Shown: positions 242-40,167 of the stretch, in pieces | Layout of the letters: each line of letters starts with the position of its first letter | Position numbering within the stretch: position 1 is the stretch's first letter | NCBI GenBank assembly: GCA_964035545.1 | Contig: OZ037765.1 | Span: 32,921,504 to 32,985,503 of the forward strand | DNA length: 64,000 nt | DNA from: Bugula neritina | Lineage: Eukaryota > Animalia > Bryozoa | Reading direction: 5' to 3' | Notes under the pieces: model-generated | The model's input: the letters and a program-made list of their open reading frames with translations, nothing else | Databases searched by the model: none | What the model was told of the DNA's origin: nothing | Translations under genes and position numbers: made by a program

Positions 242-379
242 TCTCTGTCAGCTGACTCAGTTAAAGATACTAGACATAGGAGGGAATCCTCTCAACACAG
301 TACCAGATGTTGTGTCATCACTCACATCACTTAAACAGTTGAATATGAGTCACTGTAGAATATCCAGTCTACCTGAGAG
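242..379 (+). CDS. LRR cassette exon A (138 nt, two 23-aa LRRs)
   Basis: ttattacAG|tctc...gagag|GTttgt; SLCQLTQLKILDIGGNPLNTVPDVVSSLTSLKQLNMSHCRISSLPE; phase 2-2. Confidence 0.9.
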
Positions 380-3300
380 GTTTGTGCTTCACACGCCTGT
401 TACTACTTCACAACCTCATTATTACCTTGATCCCTTTAAAGTATATCTGTACACAATTTATATTATGCAAAATAATATAAAGGATATAAATGTGTAGGTG
501 AATTTTGTACCCAGCTTAAAGTTTTGGTAAAACACAATGAGATGGGAAGGGTGGAGTGCATTATGATTTGAAAACCACCCTCTCTCATGAAAAGGTGGAT
601 TATAATTTTGTTCTACTTCTATATTAAAATATCCCAGCTATAACGTAAAATTATATTGCTACTTAGCATTTTGCTAAAGTTTTCATGTGGAAAGAATACT
701 AGATATAGGTTGTTACTAAAGAAAACAGTGGTCTAGGGGCTTGAACCCGACAAAGGCCATTAGTGATGTTAGGAAGACTACCCAGTACCCAGTCACAATT
801 GCTCCTGTGCCCCATCTGAATAAGTCCTTAGCCCAGTTTAACGAAAAATCATTTCATCGGGGATTTTCTCACAGGGATGGTGATTATAAATTTTCGTCAG
901 TTTTATTTTTAAATAAAGCGAACAAACCACTTGTTATATAAAGTACTAATACCTATTAGTGACATAATTTGTTACTGATCACTTATACATCAAATCTCAT
1001 TTATCTTATTAGATGAAACAATTTAAGGTAAAATATTGTGAAGATTGCAAAAAAAATATTTTGTTTTGTCGAGAGAACTTTTCGAAGCTATAAACTGCTG
1101 CATGATATTTCATTATCTTTCTGTTGTAAATTTTTATATTATATTCTTATATTACAGTTTCTCCCAGCTGACTCAGTTAGAGACACTAGACATGGTAGGG
1201 AATCCTCTCAACACAGTACCAGATGTTGTGTCATCACTCACATCACTTAAACAGTTGAATATGAGTAACTTTGGTATATTGAGTGTACTTGAGAGGTTTG
1301 TGTGTCACATGTTCATTACTACTTCACAACATCATTATTACTACTCTCTAACTTATATTTATACACAACTTATAGTGGGGCCATTTTACTTAATTTAGTA
1401 GACACTCAAAATCTCCAGTTTTTAGCTACTTTTCACAATTTGGCTGCTAATTTATATAGGTTTTTACCCAAAACTAACAAAATGTTAACAAAGACAACTA
1501 AATATTTCAGGTTCTTTTTAGTTTTGCTTAGTTTTCCATGTTTTTCCCCAATTGTTTAAGTAATTTGGAGCTTCGAACCATTACAAAAATTCTGTGACAG
1601 TCCGCAAATCTAAGTTAACTGATTAAATGGGGAAAAACATAGGAAATCAAGCAAACTTAAGAAGAACCTGGATTATTTAGTTGTATTTGTTAATATTTTG
1701 TTAGTTTTAGGCAAAAACCTATAATAAAAATTAGCAGCCAAATTGTGAAAAATAGTGTTGTAGTTTAGCGGATTACTACAAGTGTGGTGTTATTGTGTGC
1801 TTAGACTGCTAGAGCATAGCCCTGCTACGAGATTTACTTGAGAATCGAGCAGTGGTTGAGATTAGTTGACAATTATATTTATGATACTAATTACAAACCA
1901 AGTCACATCCAGTCAAAAAGACATACAAAAGAAAAAATATATATAGTAGTACAAGTAAGGAGCTTCGCACGGTATATCTGCATGGAACGAATGAATGCCC
2001 CCGGAAGGTCCTCCTTATAAGCGATGGTCTCCTCTGATTGGTTGGTGGCTTCTGGCAGGGGGACCGCAGCAGTAGTGGCGTATTATCCTGTGCCACTACC
2101 GCAGAGAGTGTGGTGTTTTAGAATGTTAGCCCAAGCCTAACAACGAGGATGCTATAATACTTTTGTGACTATAATATAGTTACGCTTTGCATGTAAGTGT
2201 TCGTATACCTAGTTGGCGGGAGATAGCGTATATGCTTCACGGCCATCACATCTCTACCCCACCAGCAGAAAATAAAACCTTCTGATTTCAAACCTAGGTA
2301 TCAGAACATAAAAAAATTTACATATTAAAAAAATACTTTGTAATATTGGATGATTAAAATTCGTAATAAAATAATAAAACAACAATAAAAAAGTCAGCTG
2401 TCCACTGTTACAGGGCGAAAAGATTGAAGCACCACAGTCAGTGAGGTTTGCATTTCAAAAAAAATATAACAAAAGGAAAGGAGCTATAAAAAGTTATTTT
2501 AAAAAGATGAATTTTAATTATAATGTACATTTTAGTATAAGCACCGAGATTGATGGCCAGATGAACAATTTGGCCAAAAAACACAGACTATCTGCCTGGC
2601 TTAGGGTGACGGGCTCTTCCTTTCTGTCCGGCGAGAGAGTCTTTGACACTGGCCAATTCAGTGATAACAGCCAGCAGCTGAGGAGTCAGCTGGCTCAATT
2701 TCTCTTCCAGCTTGTGGATGTGCTGCTCCAAGTCACAAATAATGCTGGATGAGCTAGGAATGGGAGATGGGCACGAGTGCCTCATCTTCTTTTCGGGCTT
2801 TTCCGCACCAGCGAATGTTATGAGGACCTGGAACCTTTGACCCAGTCGAGTCGTCAAATGACAACTCAAGGAGATGGAGGTCTCGAAGAAGAGGATCCAG
2901 GGGCATGAAAAGATAAAACGGATTCCTTAGCTCTAGACAACGACCAGCTGTGATGGCCCACCGGGAGAGAAAACCTTTGACAAGCTGTGACAACTGGCCC
3001 CAGTCCTGGACTGAGGTACTGATAATTTGGAAGAAATCCTTGGACATGGCAGCATCTACTTCAGGAAGGTGGCCCAAGTGGCATTTCATTGTCTTCTGAT
3101 TTCTGATGACATAGTCACGATTGTAACTGAATTCCCCACATGGGCAAAAGATCATTGCAAAGTGTTGGACAACATGGACACGTAAGTGACCGTAAGTCAT
3201 GAGCTGTTCTTGGCATAACTTTCAGGCTGTGTTATCAGGGGGCTCGAGTGTATTGATGATATCGATAAGGATAGATGGAAGAGTCCAATCTGACCGATGA

Positions 3301-6300
3301 TAATGAGCTGTGAGCAGTCCGCCATCTTTGAGTGCAGGCTGACTTTCTATCAGAGGTAAGGATTGAGTCTCCAGTATGGGGTTATCATCCCAGCTCATCT
3401 CTGGAGAAGACGGGGCACCCCGCCATGGCAGATAGAGTGGAATCTAAAAGAGCAAAATCAGGAGTAGATCTTTACTTCCCAACCTATGTGATTCTCAACT
3501 TTTAGCAACCTGTGAACCACTTACCCCTTTATATGGCACTTGCGAGACTATTGACAACTGCCTAGACTGATTAAGAGCAATAGATTCTAGATCTCCATCT
3601 AGTAGATCGTCTGTAATTACTAAGTTCTCATTGTCAATCGCGGTTGTCAATGTCCTCAGTAAGTCAAACTTAAACTGACTGTCTGAGTTGGACTGCACTG
3701 ACATCAGATCAGTTGCTCTAATAGTAAGCATACTTGATCTGAATGACTTACCTGCAATATCAGCAATTGAGTTCGCACTTAGATTATTAAAAGCTGTTGT
3801 ATCACAGACAGGTAGCGAGCGTCTCGCTCCATGGGTTGTCAATGTGAAAAAGACCGGGCCGCGTGGTTATTGCAAATAGTACAACTTTTGTGTCATTGGC
3901 AGATTAATCCCGCGCACTGCTCCACCTTCGCATTGAGAAAACTTTTTTTTTAATTGCACAGCTTCCACACCACCTGGAATGGTTCACCGCGGTGACTTCC
4001 GCCTAGCTCTTATTTTGCCGCGTTGCAAGCAGTCACATACAAAGTCCTGTAAGTAGGACATAGGCTCATTGTTAAGGCCAATGGTGGCTTCTCCTTTGGG
4101 GCTTCTGCCACCAAAGGAGGGGTCACGGGGACGGGAGTCCACTAGGACCTCTTCCTTATTACTGTGACTGGAACCTCTATTTAGAAACGGGATCCTCATT
4201 ATCCCAGGGATGGCAGTGGGGAGCCTGGTCAGGGCAACCGGCTTGTCCGTAGGTTGGGGTGGACAACTGGGGGCTCTGGTTCTATCTACCAGCCGCGGTA
4301 CTATGATTTTATACTCAGGACCGCGTCTCACCCGTCCGGACGCTGCTGGCTGCTTCCTGGGCTCAAGTAGCAAAAGTGCTTCACCCACTGTGTTGGGGCT
4401 GACCCAATATCGCGAGCTTCGTTCTGCACAGAGATCTGCCCAGACAACCTTACCTTGTGCATATGATTGGGCAAAGCCTCGACTACTAAGTAGGACCCCA
4501 CGAACATGGGCTGTAACTTAGCTGACTGCCCGCAGTGCCTAAAATAGCTAGCCATCCAGACCCAGTCCCGCGCCTGATAGAGCAGATGCTCCTCGAAATC
4601 TTCTTCCCGCAATTGGCATTGCTTCTCACAGAGCATGTCGTGTGCGGTTCTCATTTGTTCTACCAGTTCCTCTACGTACTCATGTGCAGAGCTTTCGAGG
4701 TTCGGAACAAGGTAGGTCAGGTGGTCGGAGATACGCGTCTCTCGACCCAGCATTAGGAAGTTGGGAGTCTCAGATGTGCTCATATGAGGCATGCTGCAGT
4801 ACGCATGCATAACCTGTGAGAGCACTGTATCCCATTCCACCTGTCTTTGGTCGAGAAGCAGACTCCGGAGAGCATCACCCAGCATGCTGTTGTTCTGTTG
4901 GACAATCCCATTGCCGTGTGGGTGATACGGGGTAGTCCTGCTCTGATTCACCCTGGGCACCTTGATCGGAGTGTATCTGTTTTGGCATACCCAGATAACA
5001 GAACACATGCTGCTCTAGGGCCCAGGCCACAGTTGAGGCCGACACATCTGGAATAGCTAGAGGGTAGCCCACCAATTAAAGTGGTCTGTGAGCATCAGAA
5101 TCCAATTGTTATCTTTGGGGGGTCGCGGGCATGGGGCCTACCAGGTCAAGAGCCATCACCTGCCAAAGTCGCCCTGTGTATAGCCGTCTCTGCCTCACAC
5201 TGTCTGGAGGGCGGCTGTGTTTACTGGCCTGGTAGATTTTACACTGTTTCACTTTCAGCCGCACATCACGACCCATCCACGGCCAACACCATCAGAGTTG
5301 CAATTTCTTGACCACTCGCTGGACCCCTACATGAGCCTGTTTGTGTGTGTCCCAAAACAACTCACGACAGATAGCAAAAGAACAAACTACTCTTTCGCGC
5401 CCTGGATGTCTGTCCTTAATGCCCAACGTGATAGTCAACAGACCATCTTTATTAAACCAAAGTGAATCCCAGCGGTGGCAGAACATCTGGAACTCAGTAC
5501 ATCACTGCTGCTGCTCCTCTTCACCGAGTAGCTTCCCTTCTTTGTTAGCCTTATAAATGTTGGTTACTACTCTAGGTAGCGTTTCCTGGAGTTTACGCAG
5601 CTCCGTGACATTCTCAGCCAAAACCGGATTAGCACAGAGAGTGTTTACAGTACCCATAGAGAGCTGGTCGTGAGCTCACCTTGTTCTCGGATGTAACCAC
5701 TGAGCAGATCAAACTGTGCTTCTATGTCAGAGCGAGGGGGCTTCATCTCTCTTCTCGATATTTAAGCACTGTTTGTACCCTCCCTCAGGACGTCGGCTTA
5801 GCCCATCTGCATTGCCTTGTTTTTTCTCAGGTCGGTGTTCGATCCGATAGGAAAACTCGGCCAGGATTTCGAGCCATTGTGCAACCTGACTGGAGGGTTC
5901 GGCTTTATTGCACAACTTGATCAGCTAGGCATAGTCTGTCCACAAGCGGAACATCATCCTGTATAGATAGGGTCGGCCAACGTGTCATTTTCCCTTTTGT
6001 CTCTCATTCTGAGTGTGTCAAAGAGTCGGCGGTTTAAGAGATTTGTAGTACACCGTTAATCCAGCAGGAAGGTGGCAGCTTTGCCGGCTAATTTGCCTCG
6101 CAAGAGGTAGCTACCACCATAGGGTTGTACTCTAGTTCTCTTAGCGTTCTCGACCTCTGTAGGTGACACTCCTCGAGCCTCGAGTGTAGACGGAGCCTGT
6201 GTCTGGTGGCTATGAGGTGGTCCTAGAAGTTGCAGAGGCACGTACATAGACTCGGGGTCCTGCCTCATCTCTTGGACAGACCACTCTTCTTGTGGCCTGT

Positions 6301-9300
6301 CGAAACGGTTTCGGAGTGGGCATGTGGTGGGAACAGGCCTGTTGGTCCTATTTGGCACCTGCCACTCAGTTGGTGGCACTGTTGACATTCTCGCCGGCTG
6401 TGAGTGGCTCCCCTGTGACCAGTGACTTATCTCCAGCCTGCGGTTGGCGGAAGAGGTTGTGGGCCGCAGTGGTTCAACTCCTGTCACCTGAGTTGCAGAC
6501 ACTCCCTGCAGAGATGTCCGCGGCTCCCGCATTCTCAGCATATTGGAGCTCGTCCTGTGGCAGTATCCACCCCCAATTTCTTGGGCCTCATAGCAGGTTT
6601 AGTCATTTGGAACTGCACCAGAGCCGCCACCAACTTGCCCACCATCTCTGTCAGGTGAGCGATGTCAGCAGCTAAGGAGGAGCTGGCCATGGAGACAACG
6701 TGAGCAGTTGGTTCAGACTCAAGTTTAGTACTCCGTAGCTCTGTCTCAACCTGGCAAGAACTCACTGGGCTTTTATGCAGCTGATTAACCTGCAAATAAG
6801 CCTCACTTTCCCTGAGTGCATCCTCGGCTGTTTTTACTCCGGTCGTCAGGAACTGGTGGTGAAGTCCCAGCTCGCCTAATGACTGTACAAAAGCGTCGTA
6901 GGTGTAGCGCTCCTGGTTTGCAGGTGACAATTCGCTGTGTGTGATTTCTGTCAACCATTTTACCGTGGCGTTATGTTCTTGCAAGGGTGTGTGTGGGTCA
7001 CGCCGCAACCCCAGCAAGTGAACCCTGGCGTCAATGCCTGAGAGGCCAAATCGGGCTAGTACGGTGGCAAAAATGCTGTCAACATTGGTTCCTAACTTGT
7101 AGGGTTTGGCCTTATCTGTCAACGCCAGCCACAGTTGTAAGAGTTCGACCCTAGGTGGCCACTGAGAGACGGTGACCACATCACTGAACTCTTGAATAAA
7201 TTTTTCCACGTTTGTTTGTTTGTTTGTTTTATTTTGTCGTAGTTGGAGAAAAAAAATTAATTGAGAAAAAATAAACAAAATGACAGGGCCTATGGCGCAA
7301 TAGCACTGTAGCTAGTCGAGGCGCCGAGCCATGAATGGTTGACAGTTATATAAGATTTTTGTTTAGGTTTTTGGAAGTTTTAGCAACTCAAAGAGTTTTA
7401 TTTTTTTATCTGGAAATTTGCCATTAGGTGGTCTCTCAGGGCAAATTTGAAACCAGCCTCCCTCTCCACAGCACGAATAGAACTAGGCAATTTATTCCAT
7501 AGCGACGAACATTGGAATTCCACTCTTCGTTGACCTGCAGCAGCAGCATAGTCTTCATTACTATTAAAAATGTGGGCTTTCAGGCAGTATTTGTCACCAG
7601 ATAGTTCTCTGTCTGCTTCCTCGCTCCGCGGTGTCAGATTACTAGGAACTTCAAGGTCTACAGGCTCACCTTCAGTCTCCGTTGGCTGCGCCGGTGGCCT
7701 GTCTTCCATCAGGACATCTCTCTCAGCGCCTCCCCCGTTAGGGTCGGACATCTGGAATTTTCTCTCCTAGTAGGATGGCAATTGCATCTGCACACAGAAA
7801 TCTCACTGCTGCTACCACTGTTGTAGTTTAGCGGATTACTACAAGTGTGGTGTTATTGTGTGCTTAGACTGCTAGAGCATGGTCCTTCTACGAGGTTTAC
7901 GTGAGAGACCCAAGTAGTGGTGGATATTAGTTGGAAATTATATTTATAGTACTAATTACAAACAAAGTTGTGTCCCGTTAAAAAAACATACACAAGAAAA
8001 AATATATATAGTAGTACAAGTAATGAGCTTTGCACGATATATCCACATGGAACATATGAATGCACCTGGAAGGTCGTTCTTGTAAGTGAAAGGTCTCCTC
8101 TGCTTGGCTGGTGGGTTCTGGCAGGGGGGCCGCTGCGGTAGTGGCGTATTATTCTGCACCACTAGAGAGTGCGGTACTTTACAATGTTAGTCCAAGCGTA
8201 ACAATGATGATGCTATAATACTTTTGTTATTATTATAATATAGTTACGCTTCGTACGTAAATGTTTGATACATAGTGGGCGGGAGATAGTGTATATGCCT
8301 CATGGTCATCACAATAGCTAATAACTGAAGTTTTTGCGTGTGTACTAATTAAAGCAAAATGACCCAGTAATATAACATAAAATAATTTACAGGATATAGA
8401 ATAAAGCTGTAGTCTCTGTACTGTGGCTGAGTTCCATGTGCTATATAATGAGCTGGTAAGGATGCAAAGTGAAGATTGGAAAAGCTAATATAAACCTTTT
8501 ATAGGGCTATGAGTTGGATTATGAAAGGAGTTGTATTATTGTATATATCAAAATGTTATATAGTTTATAATAGTTGTATACATTATATGTTATTAGGAGT
8601 TGAATATACAGCACTGATGCAGTTTATATTTTATATTGTTATATTGAATTCTCTATAAGCTTAGAGCCACAGGGCGCAGGTTTTCTGCATGCGGGTCCAA
8701 ATTTTTGAAAACTCATTGTGGGAACAATCTGTCACACACAATGCGTGGGTTGTGGATGCAGAAGTTTGTTAGCTAATGATCTTGGAGTTTAACTTTACTG
8801 CTGCCTACCGACGTTTGTTTTTAAATGTATGTCATCGGCAAAGTGACTTCAGATAATATTAAAGCGGAAATGCAAACTACACAAAGCTGTTTTAATTCAG
8901 TTCAATATAAATTAAAACTTGAATTGAAATTCTGCACTCGCCGCTCAGCATACGTTATCTACATAAAAACACGCACACAACAGCCCACATGAGTAACCCT
9001 AGTAGTGTGGCTCTACACTAAGCTGACTAGGTAATTCGTAATAATTATGTAATGACTCACTATTCTTAGCAGTGAATAAAAAAGAGCTGCTTAAAACTAA
9101 CCAGCAAGCTTTGTGCAAAATCTCCTAAAACTTTCACAAATTATATTATTCAGACCTGTTTACTCTGAATATTTTGAAGCAAAACAGCATCCCGACATAA
9201 AGATGCAAATAATGAAAATATAATCTACCATGTATTGAACCAGAACTAGTATTATTCTGTCATGATAATACTGTATGAAATTTGTATTATATCCATTGCA

Positions 9301-12300
9301 TTCAATATATGAGGTACTATTATCCTGCTTTACTCAGGATGTTGTTTTGAATGATACTCAATATTTCTGTGAAATACTGAGATGCGATATTTAACTCATA
9401 CACATATCAATACTGCATATGATGCTTATATTGTATGTAGTTATTTTCTCTTCTTATATTCTGTATATATTTATGTTCCAGTATGTATCAGCTGACTCAG
9501 TTAGAGACACCAGAAGAGACACCAGACATGGAAGACAATAGCTTCACCACAGTAAGAGCTTTTGTATCATCACCTAAACAGTTGAAGATAAGTAGATCTG
9601 GAAAATTCAGTCTGCCTGAAAGGTTTGTGTGCCACATGTTTATTACTACTTCACAACATCATTATTGCCTTCTAGTTTTAAATTATAATTATACACTACT
9701 TATAGTATGTAAATTAATATACAGGATACAGAGGGTAGCTTTATATAACTTTTAGGCTTAACCTGAGATTCCTGTGTTATACAATAAACTGAATAGGGTG
9801 CAGTGTAAGTATTTATAGAGCCACCCTATCTTATGGCTATATGAGTTGAAATATGAACAAACTTGTACTTTCCTACAAGACAACAATTAGGTAAAGATTT
9901 ACACGAGTTTCAAAGCACATATATTGTATTGAGCACAAAGAAGGTTATCCACTGCCAAAATTGCCCCAGGTGATTTTAGGTAAAAATACATGGCACAGGT
10001 AAAAATGGCACTAGTAATTAAGGGCATAAATGGAAAAGTAGGAAAAAAGCCACACTAATGTTAAATTTTCACAAAGCCTCAACCCATGAAACCCAACCCA
10101 AACTCAAACTCCCATTTCCAAACCTAAATCCTCACCCCAAACACCTAACCTCACCCAAACCCTAAAATTGAAAATGTGACATTTTTTCCTACTTATCCAT
10201 TGTTATCATTTTTGCCAGTGCCATTATTACCTGTGCCATTTTTACCTGTGCCATCTTTATCAGACACCGCCACAGGTAGTTGAACCCTAGAAATGATATT
10301 GCATAGCTTCTATTTATCTCTTGTGAGAACAAAAGTAATTGTAATTGTAATATTGATTACTTTGCCATGTAATTGTAAATAATTACATTACTTTTTAACT
10401 GTAATTATAATTGTAATTGTAATTGACAAATTTTCATGTAATTGTAATTAATTACATTCCCATGTAATTGACCCCAAGTTAAAATTAATCTATATATAGC
10501 AACTATTACTTGATGAGTTGTAGAGAATGAAACTAATTGTTTACTTTGTCGCAGAGTGCACTTACATTTATATTTCTGATGTAGTACATGTAAGCACATT
10601 ATAGAAACTAGCTTATATAATTATTGTAATCAGCTTTGATAATCTAAATCCAACTGCATTGTACATTAACATTGCATTGCTATCAGTTCAGCTTTCCTAA
10701 TTGTTGTCAAATGAATATTTTGAAGTTTAATAGAGATGATGAACAGAATAGTTTGACTTTTAAGACAGTTGACTCTTTAAATATTAATTTTAGCTCAGAA
10801 TATTCTACAATATAATGGTAGATATTTATAGTTTAGACACACCACAAGATCATGGCGGTAAATGGTGACCAAGTATTTTGTGGTTTTCACTTAATAAATT
10901 ACTGACTCTTAATATTACTATTAGTCACCACTTACTATGCTCATGTTACAAGTTGTTCTTAGCTTATAGCAGTTGGTGTTATTGCAGCACTTATTTTCTT
11001 AGAGATTAAATGTTATAAAGCTGAGCTAGATTCTTTTTCTGTAAAAAGGTGTTTATAATAGAAAGTGGTTTACTTGCCTCTCATCAAAAGACAAACTCAT
11101 TGTTTAAACAGTTTCACTTTTTTTATTATTTCAAAGCTTTCTTTAGAAAATTTAACTTTTTCTCAAAATTCTTTCAAGAATAATTTCTTGTTGAATTCTC
11201 TATCTAACAAAACTTAGAAAATTTTGCAGCTGTATATTAAAAAACTCCGAAATCTTCATGAATGCATGTTAGTCCACAGCTTCCAAATATATATAATTTC
11301 AAACTCTTAACATTATACTTTTAAAAATTGCAAGAAACGGGACAAACAATTGTTACTGCCATATTTATTTATTAGATGCCGAGTTGTTTTGACTTTTAGT
11401 TTGAGTAAGCTAGCTAGGAAAAGAATACATTTTGTAGTTAAAGTTTAATTGTTCAAATTATTTGTAAGCTTCAAATAGAAATTGGTACTTCTATGTTTGC
11501 TCAAAATTTTTATTTTGTTGTTCATTCCAATTTTCTATTTCAACAAATGTGATGCTATATAGGTTAAATAAAATAATAAGTTAAAAATTTTATGTAATAG
11601 CTGATATATCTTAAAACAGTTGTGGCTTCCTGCCTATATCTGTATTGAATAAAGTAATTATGTTGTATGTGATTTTATTCTCTTCTCACTATGTATATCT
11701 TAATACTACAGTTTCAGTCAGCTGACTCAGTTAGAGATACTAAACATAGGGTGGAATCCTCTGAACACAGTACCAGATGTTGTGTCATCACTCACATCAC
11801 TTAAACAGTTGGATATGAGTGGCTGTAGTATATCCAGTCTACCTGAGAGGTTTGTGTGTCGCATGTTTATTACTACTTCACAAAATCATTTATACCTCAC
11901 TTTAAACAGGATTTATATTCAACTTGTTGTATATAGACAAGATACTACGATCAACAAGCTGGGACATACAACTAATAATTGAACATTTCTATATTATTGT
12001 AAATTATACATATTTATGTTGTTGTATACCTTTATATTGCAGTCTCTCCCAGCTGACTCAGTTAGAGAATCTAAACATAGGAGGGAATCCTCTGAACACA
12101 GTACCAGATGTTGTGTCATCACTCACATCACTTAAACAGTTGAATATGAGTAGATGTGATATATCCAGTCTACCTGAGAGGTTTGTGTGTCACATGTTTA
12201 TTACTACTTCACAACATCATTTATACCTCACTTTGAACAGTATTTATATTCAACTTATAGTATATAGACAAGATACCACAATCAACAAGCTGGGACATAC

Positions 12301-15300
12301 AAGCAATAATTGAACATTTCCATATTATTGTAAATTACACATATTTATGTTATTGTATACCTTATATTGCAGTCTCTGTCACATGACTCAGTTAGAGATA
12401 CTATAAGACATAGGAGAGAATCCTCTCAACACAGTACCAGATGTTGTGTCATCACTCACATCACTTAAACAGTTGAATATGAGTATATGTGGTATATCCA
12501 GTCTACCTAAGAGGTTTGTGCGTCACATGTTTATTACTACTTCACAACAACATTATAGTACCTCACTTTAAACAGTATTTATATTCAACTTGTTGTATAT
12601 AAAGTATAATATGGAGTAGCTATAGTCTGACTGTGCTGTGTTATACAATGAAATGGTAAGGGCGGAGTGCAATAATATGGAAATCCACCCTTGAGCATGG
12701 TCATGGATTTTAGCCAATACCACGATATTAGGAATAAAATATTCAATTATTTATAAAAAACACAAAATATTTATTCCTGCTGCATTATTGAAGTATCACA
12801 GTGCTCTATCAACAAGTTCATATTTATGCAAGTATTTAATTCAGAGTTTGATAAACATAATTATATAATCTCTAGATTTAGGGGTACATAACAGTGACTA
12901 TTGATCACAGGTTAATAATGATGAAATAGTCATAAAAAAGGTGTGAAAACAATACCAGTAATAAATAGTTATAGCATCAACTAGCTTTATTTGTCACCCA
13001 TTTTAAAAATAAAAAGAACAGCCGACACCCTAACTATTTAATATGCAAAACCTGCAGATTTCTTCATTGATAAGACGTTGCTGATTAAATTGTATAGTGA
13101 TGTATACTATGTATAGTAATATATACTATGTATAGTAATGTATACTATTTATAGTAATATGTACTATGTATAGTAATGTACACTATGTATAGTGATGTAT
13201 ACTATGTATAATGATGTATACTATGTATAGTAATGTATACTATGTATGGTATTGTGTACTATGTATAGTAATGTATACTATGTATAGTATTGTATACTAT
13301 GTTTAGTAATGTATACTATGTATAGTAATGTATACTATGTATAGTAATGTATACTATGTATAATGATGTATACTATGTATAGTAATGTATACTATGTATA
13401 GTGATGTATACTATATGTATAAAAGTATATAATATGTATAGTAATGTGTACTATGTATAGTAATGTATACTATATATAGTAATGTATAATATGTATAGTA
13501 ATGTATACTATGTATAGTAATGTATACTATATATAGTAATGTATAATATGTATAGTAATGTATACTGTGTATAGTAATGTATACTATGTATAGTAATGTA
13601 TACTATATATAGTAATGTATAATATGTATAGTAATGTATACTATGTATAGTAATGTGTACTATGCATTGTGATGTATACTATGTATGGTGATATATACTA
13701 TATATAGTATTGTATAATATGCATAGTGATGTATACTATGTATAGTAATGCATACTATATGTATATTAGTATATAATATGTATAGTAATGTATACTATGT
13801 ATAATAATGTATACTATATATAGTAATGTATAATATGTATAGTAATGTATACTGTGTATGGTATTGTGTACTATGTATAGTATTGTATACTATGTATAGT
13901 AATGTATATTATATGTATAGTAATGTATATTATGTATAGTAATGTATAATATTTGTAGTAATGTATACTATGTACAGTAATGTATACTATGTATAGTGAT
14001 GTATACTATGTATAGTGATGTATACTATGTATATATGTGATGTATACTATGTATAGTGATGTATACTATGTATAGTAGTGAGTATACTATACATAGTGAT
14101 GATATACTATGTGTAGTAATGTATACTATATGTATATATAGTGAAATAAGGATAATTCAGTAAGCTATGTAATCTAATTTTATTATTTGCATTCATATAA
14201 AGCTCCAAAAAATTTCTCTCGTGTCAATTTGACTAAATTATATCAATAAATACTAACAAACATTGTCCTTATATAGCATTGTGAGCCTCTTAAACCTCCA
14301 GCGTCTGGATATCTCTAATGGAAGGTATCCACTGAACCAGGAGCCTAAAAACCAGATCACATGTTTACCTGATAACTTCAGCCAGTTATCTAGCTTGGGA
14401 ACTCTTGACCTCAGTGGAAACGATACTCTGAAAGTTCTGACACCAGAGATAGCTGACATGCCTCTACTAACAAAATTATGTGCTGATGGTTGTGAGTCAT
14501 TGACTTCACCACCATATGAAGTTTGTCAACAAGGAGCAGGTGCCATCAAGCAATACTACACAGACATTAGGAACCATGACAGTGTAGAGGTTTCCATGGT
14601 AACTGTTGCTGTCATTGGTCAGACTATGTCTGGCAAGACTAGTCTGATTAAGACACTACAGAGTACAGATAGAACCAGAGTTCTTACTCACAGAGTAGAA
14701 GGTGGACTTGATGATGATACGACCCCAGTGTTCAAAATGGAAGATGTTTGTGTAGATAACGATGTGTTGAGATTCATTGACTTTGGAGGTCATGAAATCT
14801 ATCAGTCGACATATCAGTTTACGTTGAAACCAAATTGTATCCCAGTTGTTGTTGTGAGTTTGGAGCAGTATGAAGCCCTGCAGCATGATATTGGTGGTAA
14901 TGAGGCAGTGAGGCGACTGTATTTTGATTGGTTGTCACATCTCTACCTGACCTATCCTAACCTCGGACCTCCTAACTTGGTGTTGACTCATTTGGATAAA
15001 ATTGATGAAAGCGAGCTTGAAGACATTCAAGACAGTTTTTTTAGCCACACGAAGCATGTTTTTGAAATCATCAGTCGCGATGAAAAGAGCAAGTGGAAAA
15101 ATGGAGGTGCTTTTGCAATAATTAAACATTTTGAAGCAAAGAATATGTTCAAAGCTGAAGATATTTATAAAGTTGGAAATGCTTACTGTGAAGCTTTCAT
15201 CCAGCTAAAAAAGAGATTGCTGAGAGAGAGTAAGCAGTTTGTGAAAGCAATACCAACAACCTGGGTGAAAGTTGAACAAGCCTTGAAGAATTTCAAAAAA

Positions 15301-18300
15301 GGTTACATGTCATTCCAAGATATCTTCAGCCAGTTGTCTAGCAGCATTTCATTAACTGAAAATCAACTTGACATCATCCTGACATACATGCACAACTGTG
15401 GCATGTTGCTCTGGTACAAGGAGGATGTGGACTTGCGTCCTTACATATTCTATCACATCCCCACAGTTACTTCACTCCTCCAAGTTCTGTTTACTCATGA
15501 TGACACAGTTTGGCAGCGTCGTCTGTCAGATTTTGCTAATCCTACTTCTGCTGGTCAACAATTCCTCACACTAAATGAATACAGGTTGTTTGCTGAAAGA
15601 TTTGCTTCAACAGGAATCATGCATGGTAAGATGTTCAAACATTTGTTAAGAACCGAAACAGACTTTCAAGAGAATGCTGCAATGAGAGTTGCGGCTCAAA
15701 TTTTGCTCTCATTCAGAATAATGTATCGCTCTACACTACAGAATGAAGAGAGCTCTTTCATTGCGCCATACTTCTGCAAGGAGTTCCTTAGTGACAACTT
15801 ACCCAACACAGGGAATTGTGTCACCTTTCATGCTCAGCTACGTTTTGATGGTCTTCCACTTCCACAGTATGCCTACCACCAGCTTGCTGTGGACATGGTC
15901 AATTCTTTCTCTCAAGAGTCAGACTGCATAACAGCCAGAAATAATGGAGCTCATGTGGTGAACAAAGATGTAACCTATCAGCTTGTACATGACTACAAGT
16001 CAGGAATAGTAAACATTTGTGTTTCCTTTGACTCCAGACAAGTATGCAGAGCATGGGAAGTTCTGGTTGACATCACCAACTCCTCTATTGAATACATTGA
16101 GACCAGATGGTGTGCCTGTAAAATAGGATGTAAATTCTTCTGTGCTCACTGTGAGCTAGAACAAGACCACCACCCATTTAGCCTCATGAATCCTTCTTGG
16201 GTCCAGTACCATGGCAAGAGATCGGCGCCCTTACCTCCCTCTTTCTTGCCTAATCAGCTCAGATGTAAGAACTTTTTTATTGTTTGCATTACTACTGCTA
16301 ATAAGCAACTATCAACGTTAATTCTTTGAGCTGTGATGCTTCATATTTACATTTATGTCGATTGTCCGACTTTAGCACAGCAGCTCAATGATTATGAAGA
16401 TTTCAATGCAGAGCTTGACTACTTTAAAAATAGACGTCTCTTCTCTAGCCACAGACATCACAATGTAAATTGGATTGCTGAATCAACTGGTGGGAAGATA
16501 TTTAGATGCAAGAAAGATTCTTCCACACCTTCATGTCTCCTCAACCCTTGTGAGTACTTTATACACTCATAATATAAAAACGGTTTTGCAGTATCATTGC
16601 TTATACAAATTGTGTAGTGTTTCTGAACCTAGTTATTACATTTCTCAAAATTCACTAGTTTATTACCATAATATGTGTTGCAGGCTCCAGTTTGTCTGAA
16701 GAAGAGAGCGAATGTCTTTCAAGTTATCTCAGCAAATATCAAAAGCCCAAGTCTACAGGTACTGTATGTTCATCCTATTATACTAATGTTTGTTATAGTA
16801 ATTATAGAAAGAATCTGAGTATGAAGTAAACATATGATCAGTGTGTGAGTATTTAAAAAACTCTGAATGTATATGTATATGCAACATATACTGTGATGTA
16901 TTACTATAAAAAGTCTATAAAATAATGTAGCATATTATTATAATAATAAATTCAGGTGAGATTCAAATTGAATCTGATAATGAAGGAACTGATGCTGATA
17001 GTGATATCTCTGAACACGAAGACTTCAGCTCACCACAAGAAGCCGGTAACATCAAAATGGAAGTTTCTGAGACCAAGAAAAAAAAGATAAAACGTCTGTT
17101 CTATTCTAATGAGGTACTTTAATAAATATTTTATAGTTGTTAGGTATGAACTACATAGTTCAAATATTTTATTTATAAAGTATTATTTGTGGTGAAATAT
17201 CTTTCACTTATAAAAACATGTTGCTCTTTTGAGTATGGTAAATGCACAATGAATTTTTTCTGCTTTCTACCAACCAGTTGAGCGCAGCTGAATTTAGTAA
17301 ATTTAATTATAGAGTTCAGTTGCATTTATATTTTCATTGGTGCTGTAGAGTATTGCAGTGAATGCTGTCTGCAAAATCCCATAAAATTATTCAATCTTAT
17401 CAAACAAATAAGAGAATGATCACCAGTTGTTAAAAAAATTTATAGGTGTATAAAATGAGTGAGACAGCAAGAGGAAGAGCTCTGATTATCAACAACAATG
17501 TTTTCCGTGATAGACCCGAGCTCTATAGAGAAGGATCTGCAGTGGATGTGTCTAATATCCGAGCAGTTTTGGCACATTTGAACTTTGAAGTAGATGTGAG
17601 ACGTGACAGAACTGCTGAGGTGTCCAAACATATAATGCCATATTTTGTTATACTTGTAAACATTAGACATTTCATATTATTCCTATATACTATATTTAAT
17701 CTCATGATTTATTCACAGGAAATGCCGAAGGATATCAAAGATGAGACTCAAAACCCTGACAATGAAGACTATGGTATGCATGTCACTGTACTCATGTCTC
17801 ACGGTGGAACATTTGGTGCTCACGGAGTTCTGTATGGGACTGATGTGAAACCAGTGAAGCTTCTCGATGTCTTTGATTTGTTGTCTTCCGACAACTTCAA
17901 GCACATGGCTGGAAAACCTAAAGTTGTGATCGTGGTAGCTTGTAGGAGTGGTGAGTTGTACATATATCTTAACGCTACTCATATCATACAGGTAAATCTT
18001 TATAACGCTGAAAAGTTTACAGCTCTCCAAATGGCATGTTTTATTGTCTTTCTATGAATAAACTATTATTTTGCTTATTTTTATTTAAAATTTCTTGTAT
18101 CTTATTTCTGTACCATAGATCACTAAGTCTTGTATCTATCCCAGCAGACAGATACAATAGATAGAGTAATGCTTCTTTCACATCTATATAATATAACTAT
18201 TGGAATTTGTAGCTGCCACAGATGCCCTGATAGAGAGAGTAGAAGCTGAGTCTGAAGAGAGTTCAGCCACACAGGAAACTCAACAGGAAACTCAACAGGA

Positions 18301-34493: not shown

Positions 34494-35281
34494 CTAGAGT
34501 CCTTGTTGGGCACGCCGGTGCTTGGCTTGGCATGTACGCAGTTTTCGTTTCATACGGCATACGGATCCCTTTAGCTGGAAGAGTCCTGTTGTAGTGTTAA
34601 GTAGGTCTGGCGCCAGCTGGGTGAACTCTTCTTGTAATCGCAGGAGGCGTTCTTCTACTGTGGCTGGGCGTACTGGGTCTGGGGACGGTGTCCGTCTGCG
34701 GCGCAAGGGTGGACTGGGGGACCTGGTTCGTCTCTTCGCCGGTGTAGGGGAGATCTCTCCTTCTTCTGGATATGTAGTTTCCTCGGGGGTGTATGTGATT
34801 TGAGGGCGGTCAGACACCAACGGGGATTGTTGGCGGGCGTTGTCTAACACACGTTGGAACCCCGAGGACAGAACGGCTAATAGCATGGCCTTCTTCACCA
34901 GAGGTCGTATAAGTGTGAGGAACTCCGGGTATAGCTTAGCGTCGACCACGTAGTTTTCTCCAGGGAAACAGCCCGCCGCTCTGTGTCTGGTGACGGGGTA
35001 GGGATACACATCATTGTACCCGCAGGGGCAGAACGTCAGTAGGAGATGAGCATTGACGTGTAGTTTAAGGGAGCGGTGAGAGGCGCAATCTTCACCACAG
35101 ATCTGGCATCTCGTCCGTCCTCTGGACCCCCAGGCTGTTTCTATTTCTTCTTCTGTTTGTGGAGACACCCACCGCCAACGGCGGCGTAGTGGCTCAGGCC
35201 GGTCACCACTAGCATACTCCTCTGGATACGGAGCGGGAAGTGTTCTATCCCGTACCCTGGTTGTAGCGGGTCGAGTGTAAT
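34494..35281 (-). CDS. ORF3 of Gypsy 2: C2H2 + C2HC zinc fingers, RS/P-rich segment, coiled coil
   Basis: CQICGEDCASHRSLKLHVNAH; CPCG...H...C; RRTRSPSPPLRRRRTPSP; heptad-like VEERLLRLQEEF; preceded by a splice acceptor. Confidence 0.85.
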
Positions 35282-35595
35282 CTGAAAAAGTTTCAACAGT
35301 GTTAATACAGTACACTGCTGTGTTGTCAGCTTGAACAGCTTGGCAACTCCTAATTCAGTTACCTCGTAGAGATTTATGGTAGTGAATAGTCAGATAGAAC
35401 ACGTATTGCAATGAGATTATAAAAATCTCTAAGTCAAACTGAGTTCTTACTACGGTATTTCACTAACCTATCTCCAGCTCGATTGACTCGGTGAGTCAGA
35501 GCTGAGCGATGCAATCTAGTTTCGTATTAAGATGTAGTTAACTCACCCCACGATCTGTTGTCGTAAGACATACTGAATGTGTGAAATGGTTTGAA

Positions 35596-38500: not shown

Positions 38501-40167
38501 AGCCTCTGGAAGGTGGCTGGGGCGGAGGTTAACCCGAAGGGCAGCACCTTCCACTTCCACAAACCGTCCCGTGTGATAAACGCCGCTTTCTCCTGGGCGT
38601 CGGGACTCAGAGGAACTTGCCAATAGCCGCTTAGCAAGTCTAACGTACTGAAGTACTTGCTGCCGGCTAGGGCGTCCAATGACTCGTCAATACGAGGTAG
38701 AGGGTAGGCGTCCTGTATGGTTACGCTATTGAGTTTGCGGTAGTCCACACAGAACCGCCAACTGCCGTCTTTCTTCCGGACCAGTACGACTGGCGAGCTC
38801 CACGCACTATGGGCGGGCTCTATTAGTCCCCGGTCCAGAAGATCTCGTACTTGTCGGCTAACCTCCTTCTCTTTCTTCGGCCCCAACCTGCGGGTGGGCT
38901 GCCGGACAGGGACTGTCCCTGCAGTCAGCGGTATTTCGTGTCTGACAATTCCAGTCAGTCCCACGTCATGCTCCCCGCTGCTGAACACATCACCGTAGTC
39001 GCGTAGTAACTTAGCCATAGCTTGGCGTTCCCGGTTACTCGCGCAGCCGCCACTGGCTGTTTCATATAACTCCCGGAGATGTGTTGGGACTGCCCCTCGT
39101 CCCTGAATAGGGTGTCGAGGGAGTGCCTCTGTCGCATCACCCAGCGACGGGCCTACGTCTCCCTCCTGAACAGAGTGAAAACGGCCCAGCATCGACCCAG
39201 CCGGGAGCTTGATAGGCTCGGTAAAGGGGTTGACGCACTGCACTAAGATCTCCCCTTGCTCAGTCAGCTGATTCAGACTGCTGGCATGTTGGATCTTTTC
39301 GTGCGCGCCTTCAACCACCCCGAGTCCAGAGATCCGGCTACTATTCACCCTGCAGTGAATGGTAGCCCGGGAGCGGCCTGGTATGGTACGGTTGCGTACC
39401 ACTTGCACACCTCCCACTAAAGGGCGGCCGAACTTGTCGACGCAGGCGAGTTCCCGCCTGGACATCATCATTGCAGATCTGCTAAAATCTATGTGACATC
39501 CGTGCCGTTTAAGGAACGGCATCCCGAGGATAGCATCCTCCTTGAGCTGACTGACGATGAACGTCTCTTGGATCGTTTGATCGCGGACTCGTCCCGTCCG
39601 CTCAATTATACCATAGAAGGGAAGGCACGACCCGTCAGCTAGGGTGCCGTATTCCCCTTCGTATGCTTCCATCTCGCCCCTGACCCTAGCGCTGAGGGTG
39701 TCGAAGAGTTGGCGGCTTAAGAGGTTTGTGGTACAGCCCGAATCAATGAGAAAAGTAACAGCTTTGCCTTCCAGTTTACCGGGCAAGAAATAGCTGTTCC
39801 CATGGGGCTGCACCTGAACTCTCCCTTCAGGCCTTACTCTCGCAGGGAGTACCTCCCTCGCTTTGGGTCGCGAAGGAGGTCTCTTGGGGCGGTGATAGGT
39901 AGGCCTCGGGGGTGCCGAGGCTAGATTCTCAGCTACCTTTGTGTGCTCCCATCCAGATTCTTGGACTTGTAGCCCTGTGAATCTGTTGTGAAGGGGCATA
40001 GAAAAGGCAGCCGCGGGGCGAAGCCCCTTGCTGGTCTGTCGTGGCTGTTGCCACTGTTGGTTGCCAGTACGCGGTACCCGTCTGGGTGACCTGCGTTTCT
40101 TCTTCCCTAGAGGTTTCATCGTCGGCCCGCGGAAGGTGGGAACATCTGCGGGCCGCGGTAGTTTAAC
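35596..40167 (-). CDS. pol: Pol of Gypsy 2 (PR-RT-RH-IN), -1 frameshift, one premature TGA
   Basis: FLIDSG, YLDD, TDAS, HHCC and D,D35E motifs; in-frame TGA at 38374-38376 (RL*GAGLKLKPSKC). Confidence 0.93.

What the first reader, a model, noticed from the sequence alone, without database searches (positions are those of the whole stretch)
242..12513. Variation focused on predicted ligand-binding LRR positions around an invariant core
Seen in A/B/D/E/F: the 57-nt core encoding NPLNTVPDVVSSLTSLKQL differs only by one synonymous ctc/ctg, whereas x positions of LxxLxLxxN/CxI vary non-synonymously (K/E; I/T/I/N/I; D/N; G/G/W/G/E; N/D; H/N/G/R/I; R/G/S/D/G), several by multi-nucleotide codon changes. 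Established: these positions form the concave beta-strand face, the site of positive selection in plant NLRs and VLRs. Inference: diversifying selection for pathogen recognition.
Basis: partly seen in the sequence, partly recalled or inferred. Interest (0 to 1): 0.85.

Follow-up and report, generated by a model that had tools for sequence, protein, structure and literature searches.

The report
Hypervariable LRR exons, bryozoan ROCO-caspase gene
The repeats are swappable exons that build the sensor arm of a moss-animal (bryozoan) protein joining a leucine-rich-repeat sensor, a GTPase switch and a caspase. Only their predicted binding-face residues change, faster than neutral DNA, as in immune receptors, but no ligand or function has been tested.

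Summary

- **What the units are:** A, B, D, E and F (plus a degenerate C) are 138-nt, phase-2 symmetric exons with AG/GT borders. Each encodes two 23-residue LRRs. They lie upstream of a single exon encoding LRR-Roc-COR and of caspase exons. The organism is a bugulid bryozoan; the best hits are Bugula neritina proteins.
- **Family size:** the 48-nt core occurs 201 times in the genome, and there are at least 97 Roc-COR ORFs.
- **Where variation falls:** in 58 intact cassettes, amino-acid variation sits at LRR x positions (codons 9, 11, 13, 14, 16, 34, 36, 37, 39) plus two codons at the exon's 5' border.
- **Rates:** in recently duplicated pairs, x positions differ 5 times more than the flanking introns. 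Codons 14 and 37 exceed the intron rate 2.2-2.5 fold. My own site models strongly favour a class with omega about 5-7.
  - The core is conserved at the DNA level. Its synonymous sites change 4.6 times more slowly than introns. It differs by only 2 of 48 nt from cassettes of genes whose Roc-COR is about 40% identical. Cassettes recombine, so structural constraint alone does not explain the core.
  - In this window, B, C and F look decayed; F carries an in-frame stop.
- **Still untested:** pathogen recognition is an inference.

The scan has already reported this family on other pieces of this genome. The closest published analogue is the brown-algal LRR-ROCO genes.

The parts
242..379 (+). LRR cassette exon A: 138 nt, phase 2-2, two 23-residue LRRs, open frame
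   Evidence: AG acceptor and GT donor; translation
1158..1295 (+). LRR cassette exon B: open frame, but framework residues are changed (C38F, P44L, I12M), so probably decaying
1756..8313 (.). Degraded LTR retrotransposon inserted in the intron between B and C; LTRs at 1756-2250 and 7819-8313
   Evidence: Direct repeat families D5, D8, D10-D13 with about 6065-nt spacing and 77-94% identity; broken integrase- and gag-like ORFs
9482..9622 (+). Cassette C: 141 nt, with a 12-nt insertion and a 9-nt deletion inside the core. It resembles a distinct cassette type carrying the same 9-nt deletion at three other arrays. Here it is further degraded.
11712..11849 (+). LRR cassette exon D, intact
12043..12180 (+). 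LRR cassette exon E, intact; used as the reference copy for the searches
12373..12513 (+). Cassette F: 141 nt; a 3-nt insertion gives an in-frame TAA at 12404-12406. It is a pseudo-exon, or an exon that must be skipped.
12086..12142 (+). 57-nt nucleotide-invariant core, shown for E. The same core lies at 285-341, 1201-1257, 11755-11811 and 12419-12475.
   Evidence: 201 genome copies within 3 mismatches of its last 48 nt; per-site diversity 0.02-0.05, third codon positions included
12181..12202 (+). Conserved first 22 nt of the downstream intron, an extended donor beginning GTTTGTGTGTCACA; present after every cassette
   Evidence: 2.1 parsimony steps per site against 7.9 deeper in the introns; 71 genome matches, some on C6
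13090..14150 (.). 19-nt minisatellite (about 46 or more copies) in the last intron before the large exon
14277..16329 (+). Large exon: terminal LRRs, Roc GTPase (P-loop GQTMSGKTS) and COR. Its acceptor is in phase with the cassettes. The 3' end is uncertain, because related transcripts diverge from the window at about 16221.
   Evidence: ORF; Pfam COR-A 38.9 bits, above cut-off, and Roc 22.8 bits, below cut-off; acceptor read; RNA contigs
17446..18057 (+). Caspase p20 region (Peptidase_C14), probably two exons with an in-frame open intron at about 17626-17718; the SHG histidine and ACRS cysteine are present
   Evidence: Pfam 77.1 bits; split tblastn matches in paralogues; sequence

Best explanation
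The units are germline exons, some of them now decayed, that form the ligand-binding arm of one member of a large bryozoan gene family. The family's architecture is an LRR array, a Roc-COR GTPase switch and a caspase.

- **Cassette design.** Each 138-nt exon is frame-symmetric (phase 2 on both sides) and encodes two 23-residue LRRs. Cassettes can therefore be duplicated, deleted or exchanged without breaking the reading frame. Transcripts join them in series.
- **How the family evolves.** Two processes act together.
  1. Recombination between cassettes (unequal crossing-over, gene conversion, exon shuffling) has breakpoints in or next to the exon. It keeps the central 48-57 nt and the start of the downstream intron almost identical among hundreds of copies.
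  2. Diversifying selection maintains and accelerates amino-acid change at the solvent-exposed x positions of the two beta-strand segments. These are x3, x5, x7, x8 and x10 of LRR1, and x5, x7, x8 and x10 of LRR2.
- **Shown here:** exon status, family size, site-specific excess of nonsynonymous change over intron and synonymous rates, recombination, and nucleotide-level conservation of the core.
- **Inferred:** that the concave face binds a ligand; that binding is relayed through Roc-COR to the caspase, as in a one-chain sensor-switch-executioner; and that the ligands are pathogen-derived or allogeneic.
- **State of the window's own copy.** It is a partly eroded member. It has a retrotransposon in one intron, a stop codon in F, and degraded B and C.
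For: **Exon status**
- AG/GT borders and a 138-nt phase-2 design.
- The large exon's acceptor is in the same phase.
- RNA contigs cover exons and not introns. One contig joins a cassette end to a cassette start: 11849 to 11718 with TCTCTC between, depth 50.7 in X1 and 16.1 in X2.

**Gene context**
- COR-A, Roc and LRR_8 matches; caspase match.
- Paralogues repeat the Roc-COR then caspase order.
- Closest proteins are from Bugula neritina. One homologue carries caspase, Roc and COR together.

**Family size**
- 201 core copies and at least 97 Roc-COR ORFs.

**Site pattern**
-. The cassette aligns in register with the LRRs of SHOC-2, LRRD1 and LIC11098.

**Rates**
- pN at x positions is 0.16 against intron divergence 0.031.
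- codons 14 and 37 change at 2.5 and 2.2 times the intron rate.
- site models.
- the D-E and E-F introns are 6.8% diverged, while exons D and E are 16% diverged outside the core.

**Recombination**
- Upstream flank, exon and downstream flank each reject the other two ML trees, AU p <= 0.003.

**Core**
- Synonymous rate 1.7 against intron 7.9 steps per site.
- 2 of 48 nt differ from C6 cassettes, whose Roc-COR is 39-43% identical.
Against: - **Recombination weakens the selection tests.** It inflates the site-model likelihood-ratio tests. It can also place old variants next to young introns, so the excess over intron divergence is not proof of selection on new mutations.
- **The omega values are inflated.** Exon dS is itself depressed, which raises omega about 2.7-fold. 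Against the intron rate, only codons 14 and 37 are clearly above 1; codon 9 is marginal.
- **Intron rates are uncertain.** Alignments of diverged AT-rich introns are unreliable.
- **Methods are home-made.** The codon models are my own implementation with fixed branch lengths, not PAML or HyPhy.
- **Sampling is partial.** Only about 67 of roughly 350 cassettes were sampled, all from chromosome C1.
- **No structure model.** No model of the joined array was made.
- **RNA evidence is family-level.** Contigs are 95-99% identical, so they do not prove that this gene is expressed or which of its cassettes are used.
- **No functional data of any kind.**
Confidence: 0.75

Rival explanations
1. Patchwork by gene conversion alone. 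The hypervariable codons hold an old, limited pool of variants that recombination moves between cassettes. The apparent dN/dS above 1, and the excess over intron divergence, are artefacts of mosaic histories and not of positive selection.
For: - There is strong tree incongruence between the flanks and the exon.
- The exon data fit the flank topology far worse than their own tree, lnL -2507 against -2247.
- Synonymous differences are also raised in x codons, pS 0.19-0.25 against 0.05-0.13 elsewhere.
Against: - Conversion alone would homogenise, not diversify. Keeping 11-13 amino acids at codons 14 and 37 next to a homogenised core needs selection for diversity, or an enormous variant pool.
- Nonsynonymous steps at codons 14 and 37 exceed the intron rate on any of the trees used, and the signal persists when each exon half has its own tree.
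- Variation is confined to predicted exposed positions, although conversion tracts would not respect codon positions.
Confidence: 0.12
2. Relaxed constraint or decay. The cassettes, at least those in this window and the orphan arrays without a Roc-COR exon, are pseudo-exons drifting neutrally. The pattern reflects which positions can change without being purged.
For: - In the window, F carries a stop, C is degenerate and B has lost framework residues. An LTR element sits in the array.
- Arrays at 32.788-32.843 Mb have no Roc-COR exon downstream, and some lie next to a retroelement-type zinc-finger ORF.
Against: - Neutral drift cannot exceed the intron rate, and it would not spare synonymous sites of the core.
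- 58 of 67 sampled cassettes keep their frame, splice sites and framework residues.
- Almost all Roc-COR ORFs are open.
- Family transcripts are spliced cassette to cassette.
Confidence: 0.05
3. The core and the extended donor are conserved by selection on the RNA or DNA sequence itself, not by recombination. Candidates are exonic and intronic splicing signals needed to splice many near-identical short exons in order, or a shared small-RNA target that co-regulates the family.
For: - Core synonymous sites and the first 14-22 intron nucleotides are conserved. This holds even in C6 genes whose Roc-COR is only about 40% identical.
- Both C1-C6 differences in the core are nonsynonymous, and none of about 16 synonymous sites differs.
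Against: - There is no RNA-structure signal (z = -0.16) and no Rfam match.
- Recombination at or near the exons is directly supported and would give the same pattern.
- No small-RNA data are available.
- This rival concerns only the core. It is compatible with diversifying selection at the x positions.
Confidence: 0.2

Closest known systems
Brown-algal LRR-ROCO genes with shuffled LRR exons (Ectocarpus, Saccharina; Zambounis et al. 2012, PMC3341825; Teng et al. 2024, PMC11378527)
   Same: - LRR array N-terminal to Roc-COR.
- LRRs encoded by short, frame-symmetric, phase-2 exons in tandem.
- Exon shuffling.
- Positively selected sites on the concave face.
- LRR-only arrays elsewhere in the genome.
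- A large lineage-specific family proposed as immune receptors.
   Different: - Here each exon is 138 nt and encodes two LRRs, not 72 nt and one.
- The host is an animal.
- A caspase follows Roc-COR.
- The exon core and the start of the intron are nearly invariant at the nucleotide level across hundreds of copies.
- Common descent of the exon design is untested and unlikely.
- Alternative splicing of cassettes, reported for the algae, was not tested here.
Animal MFHAS1/MASL1-type ROCO proteins (LRR-Roc-COR)
   Same: The domain order is LRR-Roc-COR. Related bryozoan (Watersipora) proteins are named MFHAS1 homologues by NCBI.
   Different: - MFHAS1 is single-copy and has no caspase.
- It is not built from hypervariable cassette exons.
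- Identity to the Watersipora proteins is only 36-37%.
Plant NLR and other LRR immune receptors under diversifying selection at xxLxLxx
   Same: Amino-acid hypervariability is restricted to solvent-exposed beta-strand positions of LRRs. The genes form clustered tandem families that evolve by recombination and gene conversion (established knowledge; discussed in PMC11378527).
   Different: - The switch is a Roc-COR GTPase, not NB-ARC or NACHT.
- The effector is a fused caspase.
- One exon corresponds to two repeats.
Lamprey/hagfish variable lymphocyte receptors (VLR)
   Same: LRR cassettes carry variable concave residues. Short conserved stretches could serve as homology for cassette exchange. 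Cassette-only arrays exist in the genome.
   Different: - VLR cassettes lack splice sites and are copied somatically into an incomplete germline gene.
- Here the cassettes are ordinary exons of complete germline genes, spliced in series.
- No somatic rearrangement is shown.
Prokaryotic AP-GTPase/COR conflict systems with variable LRRs and swappable effector domains (Kaur et al. 2021, PMC8195603)
   Same: A sensor-switch-effector logic with rapidly evolving N-terminal LRRs fused to a Roc-like GTPase, COR and a C-terminal effector.
   Different: Those are bacterial, intron-less and carry different effectors. Only weak sequence similarity to bacterial COR proteins was seen (E about 1e-12).

Membership tests
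ROCO proteins (Roc-COR tandem) | COR domain directly C-terminal to a Roc GTPase | tested here: met
   Pfam COR-A scores 38.9 bits (cut-off 35.3) at residues 331-396 of the large-exon ORF, directly after the Roc match.
ROCO proteins (Roc-COR tandem) | Roc GTPase domain with a P-loop | tested here: inconclusive
   Pfam Roc scores 22.8 bits, below the 27-bit cut-off. The P-loop GQTMSGKTS is readable in the ORF, and homologues carry PF08477.
ROCO proteins (Roc-COR tandem) | LRR array N-terminal to Roc (the LRR-Roc-COR subtype) | tested here: met
   The cassette exons and the in-exon LRRs precede Roc on the same strand and in phase. The cassette aligns to solved 23-residue LRRs.
Caspase (Peptidase_C14) | p20 domain with a catalytic His and Cys | tested here: met
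   PF00656 scores 77.1 bits against a cut-off of 21.4. The SHG and ACRS motifs are readable. Enzymatic activity was not tested.
Exon-shuffled LRR-ROCO receptors (brown-alga type) | Each LRR on its own 72-bp phase-2 exon | tested here: not met
   Exons are 138 nt and encode two LRRs. The phase-2 symmetry is shared.
Exon-shuffled LRR-ROCO receptors (brown-alga type) | Exon shuffling and recombination among cassettes | tested here: met
   AU tests reject a shared history of upstream flank, exon and downstream flank. The core is shared between Roc-COR subfamilies that are only about 40% identical.
Exon-shuffled LRR-ROCO receptors (brown-alga type) | Positively selected sites on the concave face | tested here: met
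   Assignment of sites to the concave face rests on motif register and established LRR structure, not on a model of this protein.
Exon-shuffled LRR-ROCO receptors (brown-alga type) | Alternative splicing of cassettes | not testable with these tools
   Only short contigs of RNA runs were available. They show cassette-to-cassette junctions but no isoforms.
VLR-type somatically assembled LRR receptors | Cassettes without splice signals, copied somatically into an incomplete germline gene | tested here: not met
   The cassettes have AG/GT borders and are spliced in series within complete germline genes. Somatic DNA was not examined.
Dscam-type mutually exclusive exon arrays | Only one exon of a cluster is included per transcript | tested here: not met
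   RNA contigs join one cassette's end to another cassette's start. No structured docking or selector signal was found.

The most novel reading that the evidence does not exclude
The nucleotide-invariant core, together with the conserved intron start, is a dedicated homology box. It lets cassettes be exchanged among about 100 ROCO-caspase genes and the orphan cassette arrays. This exchange, or combinatorial cassette skipping, may also operate within an individual colony. That would give zooids or cell lineages individualised receptor repertoires: an animal LRR diversification system parallel to VLRs but built on exons.
Probability: 0.07. Interest if true: 0.95.

Novelty: new variant of a known kind. 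Interest (0 to 1): 0.6.

Why it matters
Bryozoans are colonial animals whose immunity and allorecognition are essentially unstudied at the molecular level.

- **A new receptor design in animals.** The family has about 100 genes. Each fuses a hypervariable LRR surface to a Roc-COR switch and a caspase. That would be a one-chain sensor-switch-executioner using a ROCO module where other lineages use NACHT or NB-ARC.
- **Convergence.** The cassette-exon design has so far been reported only from brown algae, so this would be a striking independent origin.
- **Testable questions.**
  - How is a 48-57-nt stretch kept nearly identical at the DNA level across subfamilies that are otherwise about 40% identical?
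  - Does recombination between exon cassettes generate receptor diversity?

My four literature searches found no description of this family in bryozoans.

Tried and rejected
1. **Looking for an annotated or transcript-derived protein with several joined cassettes, to fold it.**
   - The whole-library phmmer search gave only generic LRR proteins at about 40% identity.
   - The word-index search gave only single-cassette read-through ORFs from metagenome contigs.
2. **RNA structure as the reason for core conservation.** The fold is no better than shuffles (z = -0.16), and there is no Rfam family.
3. **Clustering intron flanks into types by single linkage.** Everything collapsed into one cluster, which was uninformative. 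I replaced it with AU topology tests.
4. **Fetching the C6 and remaining C1 cassettes.** Statements about C6 therefore rest on the pattern-search listings only.
5. **An ORF about 1.8 kb upstream of some cassette triplets, first taken for an N-terminal exon.** It is related to an ORF that accompanies Gypsy elements in the window, so I rejected it as part of the gene.
6. **A first run of the site models.** It timed out and was re-run in parts.
7. **Expression of this particular gene.** It cannot be separated from that of its paralogues with contigs that are 95-99% identical.

Full report
**1. What is in the window**

The region is eukaryotic. It is AT-rich, with GC-rich retroelements.

Six copies of one unit lie on the + strand:
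- A 242-379
- B 1158-1295
- C 9482-9622
- D 11712-11849
- E 12043-12180
- F 12373-12513

Each unit is preceded by a pyrimidine-rich tract ending in AG and followed by GT. The standard length is 138 nt. One base completes a split codon, 45 codons follow, and two bases start the next codon. Both neighbouring introns are therefore in phase 2.

Each unit encodes two 23-residue leucine-rich repeats.

The next coding block is one large exon, 14277-16329. Its acceptor is in the same phase. It encodes further LRRs, a Roc GTPase and a COR domain. A caspase p20 region follows at 17446-18057.

The closest proteins in public data are from the bryozoan Bugula neritina, at 77-83% identity. One B. neritina homologue carries Roc, COR and caspase together. 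The genome is 216 Mb. I take it to be B. neritina or a close bugulid relative.

**2. Check of the observation**

The 57-nt core differs only by CTC/CTG among A, B, D, E and F. Its last 48 nt are identical in all five.

- F has a 3-nt insertion that makes an in-frame TAA at 12404-12406.
- B has lost framework residues, among them the Cys of the second repeat and the Pro of LP.
- C belongs to a different, shortened cassette type and is further degraded here.

A decayed LTR retrotransposon (1756-8313) sits between B and C. One more cassette and a conserved 5' exon lie just upstream of the window start.

The window's gene is thus a partly eroded member of its family.

**3. The family**

- The 48-nt core occurs 201 times in the genome at up to 3 mismatches, on chromosomes C1 and C6. 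The reversed control pattern gave none.
- A DNA search with exon E gave 347 first-look candidates.
- There are at least 97 Roc-COR ORFs, nearly all open.
- The window's subfamily has eight genes on C1 (32.86-33.66 Mb), with 82-93% identical Roc-COR.

I assembled 264 kb around the window plus seven smaller pieces. These yielded 67 cassettes, of which 58 are intact.

The 264 kb hold four Roc-COR-caspase genes. They also hold cassette arrays with no Roc-COR exon downstream. Some of these lie next to an ORF of retroelement type.

**4. Are they exons?**

Contigs from four probable RNA runs, from four studies, cover the cassettes and the large exon. They leave the introns, including the 1.7-kb last intron, uncovered.

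One contig type runs from a cassette's last base (11849) through TCTCTC into position 7 of a cassette. That is exactly the predicted exon-exon junction. Its depth is 50.7 in X1 and 16.1 in X2.

This shows that the family is transcribed and that cassettes are spliced in series, which argues against mutually exclusive use.

The contigs are 95-99% identical to the window. They therefore do not prove expression of this particular gene.

**5. Where variation falls**

In the 58 intact cassettes the framework is nearly fixed. Many residues occur at these codons:

| Codon | Residues seen | LRR position |
|---|---|---|
| 9 | 8 | LRR1 x3 |
| 11 | 7 | LRR1 x5 |
| 13 | 9 | LRR1 x7 |
| 14 | 13 | LRR1 x8 |
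| 16 | 6 | LRR1 x10 |
| 34 | 5 | LRR2 x5 |
| 36 | 9 | LRR2 x7 |
| 37 | 11 | LRR2 x8 |
| 39 | 7 | LRR2 x10 |

Codons 1 and 2, at the exon's 5' border, also vary; they are not x positions.

The cassette aligns in register with solved 23-residue LRRs: Leptospira LIC11098, LRRD1 and SHOC-2.

The nine most variable codons all fall within the 12 x positions defined beforehand from the motif, p = 2.5e-7.

By established LRR structure (Kobe and Kajava 2001; not computed here), x3, x5, x7 and x8 line the concave beta-sheet, and x10 begins the ascending loop.

No AlphaFold model of the array was made.

**6. Rates**

*Diversity per site*
- Introns more than 30 nt from the exon: 0.35-0.45.
- The core: 0.02-0.05, third codon positions included.
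- Codons 14 and 37: 0.5-0.7.

*Pairwise comparisons*
- In the 25 cassette pairs with intron divergence below 5% (mean 0.031), nonsynonymous differences per site are 0.16 at x positions and 0.02 elsewhere. Synonymous differences are 0.056.
- In the most diverged pairs (intron 0.55), synonymous divergence outside the x codons is only 0.13.

*Parsimony on a tree of exon plus flanks*
- Introns: 7.9 steps per site.
- Exon synonymous sites: 2.9.
- Core synonymous sites: 1.7.
- Codon 14: 19.6 nonsynonymous steps per site, p = 2e-8 against the intron rate.
- Codon 37: 17.6, p = 2e-6.
- Codons 2, 9, 13, 16, 34, 36 and 39: 8-12.

*Within the window*
- The D-E and E-F introns differ by 6.8%.
- Exons D and E differ by 9.4% overall, and by 16% outside the core.

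**7. Codon site models**

PAML and HyPhy are not installed. I wrote a GY94-F3x4 site-model likelihood. Branch lengths were fixed from IQ-TREE apart from one fitted overall scale factor.

| Data and tree | M1a vs M2a (2dlnL) | M7 vs M8 (2dlnL) |
|---|---|---|
| Whole exon, flank topology | 252 | 306 |
| Whole exon, exon topology | 166 | 201 |
| 5' half, own tree | 77 | 101 |
| 3' half, own tree | 43 | 60 |

- A class with omega of 5.2-6.9 holds 21-27% of codons (whole-exon fits).
- Codons 1, 2, 9, 11, 13, 14, 16, 34, 36, 37 and 39 have posterior above 0.95. Codon 41 is lower in some fits. The 3' half adds codon 32.

Caveats:
- Recombination inflates these tests.
- The depressed exon dS inflates omega about 2.7-fold.
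- Against the intron rate, only codons 14 and 37 are clearly above 1.

**8. Recombination and the nature of the core**

The upstream flank, the exon and the downstream flank each reject the maximum-likelihood trees of the other two. AU p is at most 0.003, with likelihood differences of 400-965. Histories therefore change within about 250 nt centred on the exon. This is what cassette exchange with breakpoints in or beside the exon would give.

Protein constraint alone does not explain the core's conservation:
- Its synonymous rate is 4.6 times below the intron rate.
- Its dN/dS is about 0.55-0.8.

Cassettes of C6 genes add to this. Their Roc-COR is only 39-43% identical to the window's. Yet they carry the same 48 nt with two differences, both nonsynonymous and fixed in dozens of C6 copies.

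The exon end plus the first 14 intron nucleotides also recur on C6.

Two explanations remain:
- Cassettes are homogenised within clusters and occasionally exchanged between subfamilies.
- The nucleotide sequence itself is under selection, for splicing or for regulation.

There is no RNA-structure signal and no Rfam family.

**9. Interpretation**

The best-supported reading is a germline-encoded, recombining cassette array whose exposed LRR residues are under diversifying selection.

The array forms the recognition arm of a sensor (LRR), switch (Roc-COR), executioner (caspase) protein.

The ligand class is unknown. Pathogen, symbiont or allogeneic tissue are all possible. 'Pathogen recognition' stays an inference.

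**10. Comparison with what is known**

The closest published system is the brown-algal LRR-ROCO family. It has 72-bp phase-2 exons with one LRR each, exon shuffling, four positively selected concave sites and alternative splicing (PMC3341825, PMC11378527).

The bryozoan family shares that logic but differs in four ways:
- It has two LRRs per exon.
- It is an animal family.
- It carries a fused caspase.
- Its core is invariant at the nucleotide level.

It is not VLR-like in mechanism, because the cassettes have splice sites and are spliced in series. It is not Dscam-like for the same reason.

My four literature searches found no description of this family in bryozoans.

**11. Earlier notes of this scan**

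After forming my reading I found that follow-up agents have reported the same family on at least eight other pieces of this genome, with similar conclusions. First readers had also noted the same stretch under other headings.

These are unchecked AI notes and I do not count them as support.

What this report adds:
- a quantitative test of the site pattern against intron rates;
- the recombination tests;
- the demonstration that the core is conserved at the DNA level, even between Roc-COR subfamilies that are about 40% identical.

**12. Verdict**

Diversifying selection at the binding face is supported. The explanation of the core, and the pathogen claim, are not.
- Novelty: a new variant of a known kind.

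Noticed in passing
window 1756-8313: A decayed LTR retrotransposon lies inside the cassette array's intron. Its LTRs (1756-2250 and 7819-8313) are only about 77-94% identical, and the internal gag- and integrase-like ORFs are broken. The insertion is old and has been tolerated in the intron.
   Followed up: partly
window 13090-14150: A 19-nt minisatellite of about 46 or more head-to-tail copies fills much of the last intron before the Roc-COR exon.
   Followed up: no
window 34494-41063 and 44264-48376: There are two large retroelements. One is a Gypsy-type element on the minus strand, with gag, protease-RT, RNase H-integrase ORFs and an extra zinc-finger ORF at 34494-35315. The other is an intact-looking 1370-aa gag-pol ORF on the plus strand.
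   Followed up: no
L036:6801-7400 and L036:1747-2331 (C1 32.833 and 32.838 Mb); also C1 33.079, 33.083 and 33.091 Mb: Triplets of cassettes with about 910-nt spacing recur together with a 200-aa zinc-finger ORF. That ORF is related to the extra ORF of the Gypsy elements. No Roc-COR exon follows in the arrays at 32.83-32.84 Mb. These could be partial gene duplicates or cassettes carried along with a repeat.
   Followed up: partly
about 500-1270 nt upstream of window position 1 (L018/L044; C1 32920239-32921007): A conserved 5' coding exon of about 85 codons, itself LRR-like, sits upstream of the first cassette in at least five arrays. It is 77-82% identical at the DNA level, and two dipeptide positions vary between paralogues.
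   Followed up: partly
window 16221-16550: RNA contigs of paralogues diverge from the window at about 16221 and rejoin at about 16506, with about 40 other letters in between. The window gene appears to differ from its relatives here, either by an insertion or in where the large exon ends.
   Followed up: no
G000 C6 2.5-6.3 Mb; C7 5.0-7.7 Mb; C1 33.8-35.5 Mb; C5 11.5-17.3 Mb: Further large clusters of Roc-COR ORFs lie here, 39-44% identical to the window's. On C6 they sit beside cassette arrays with a cluster-specific version of the core, carrying two fixed nonsynonymous changes.
   Followed up: partly
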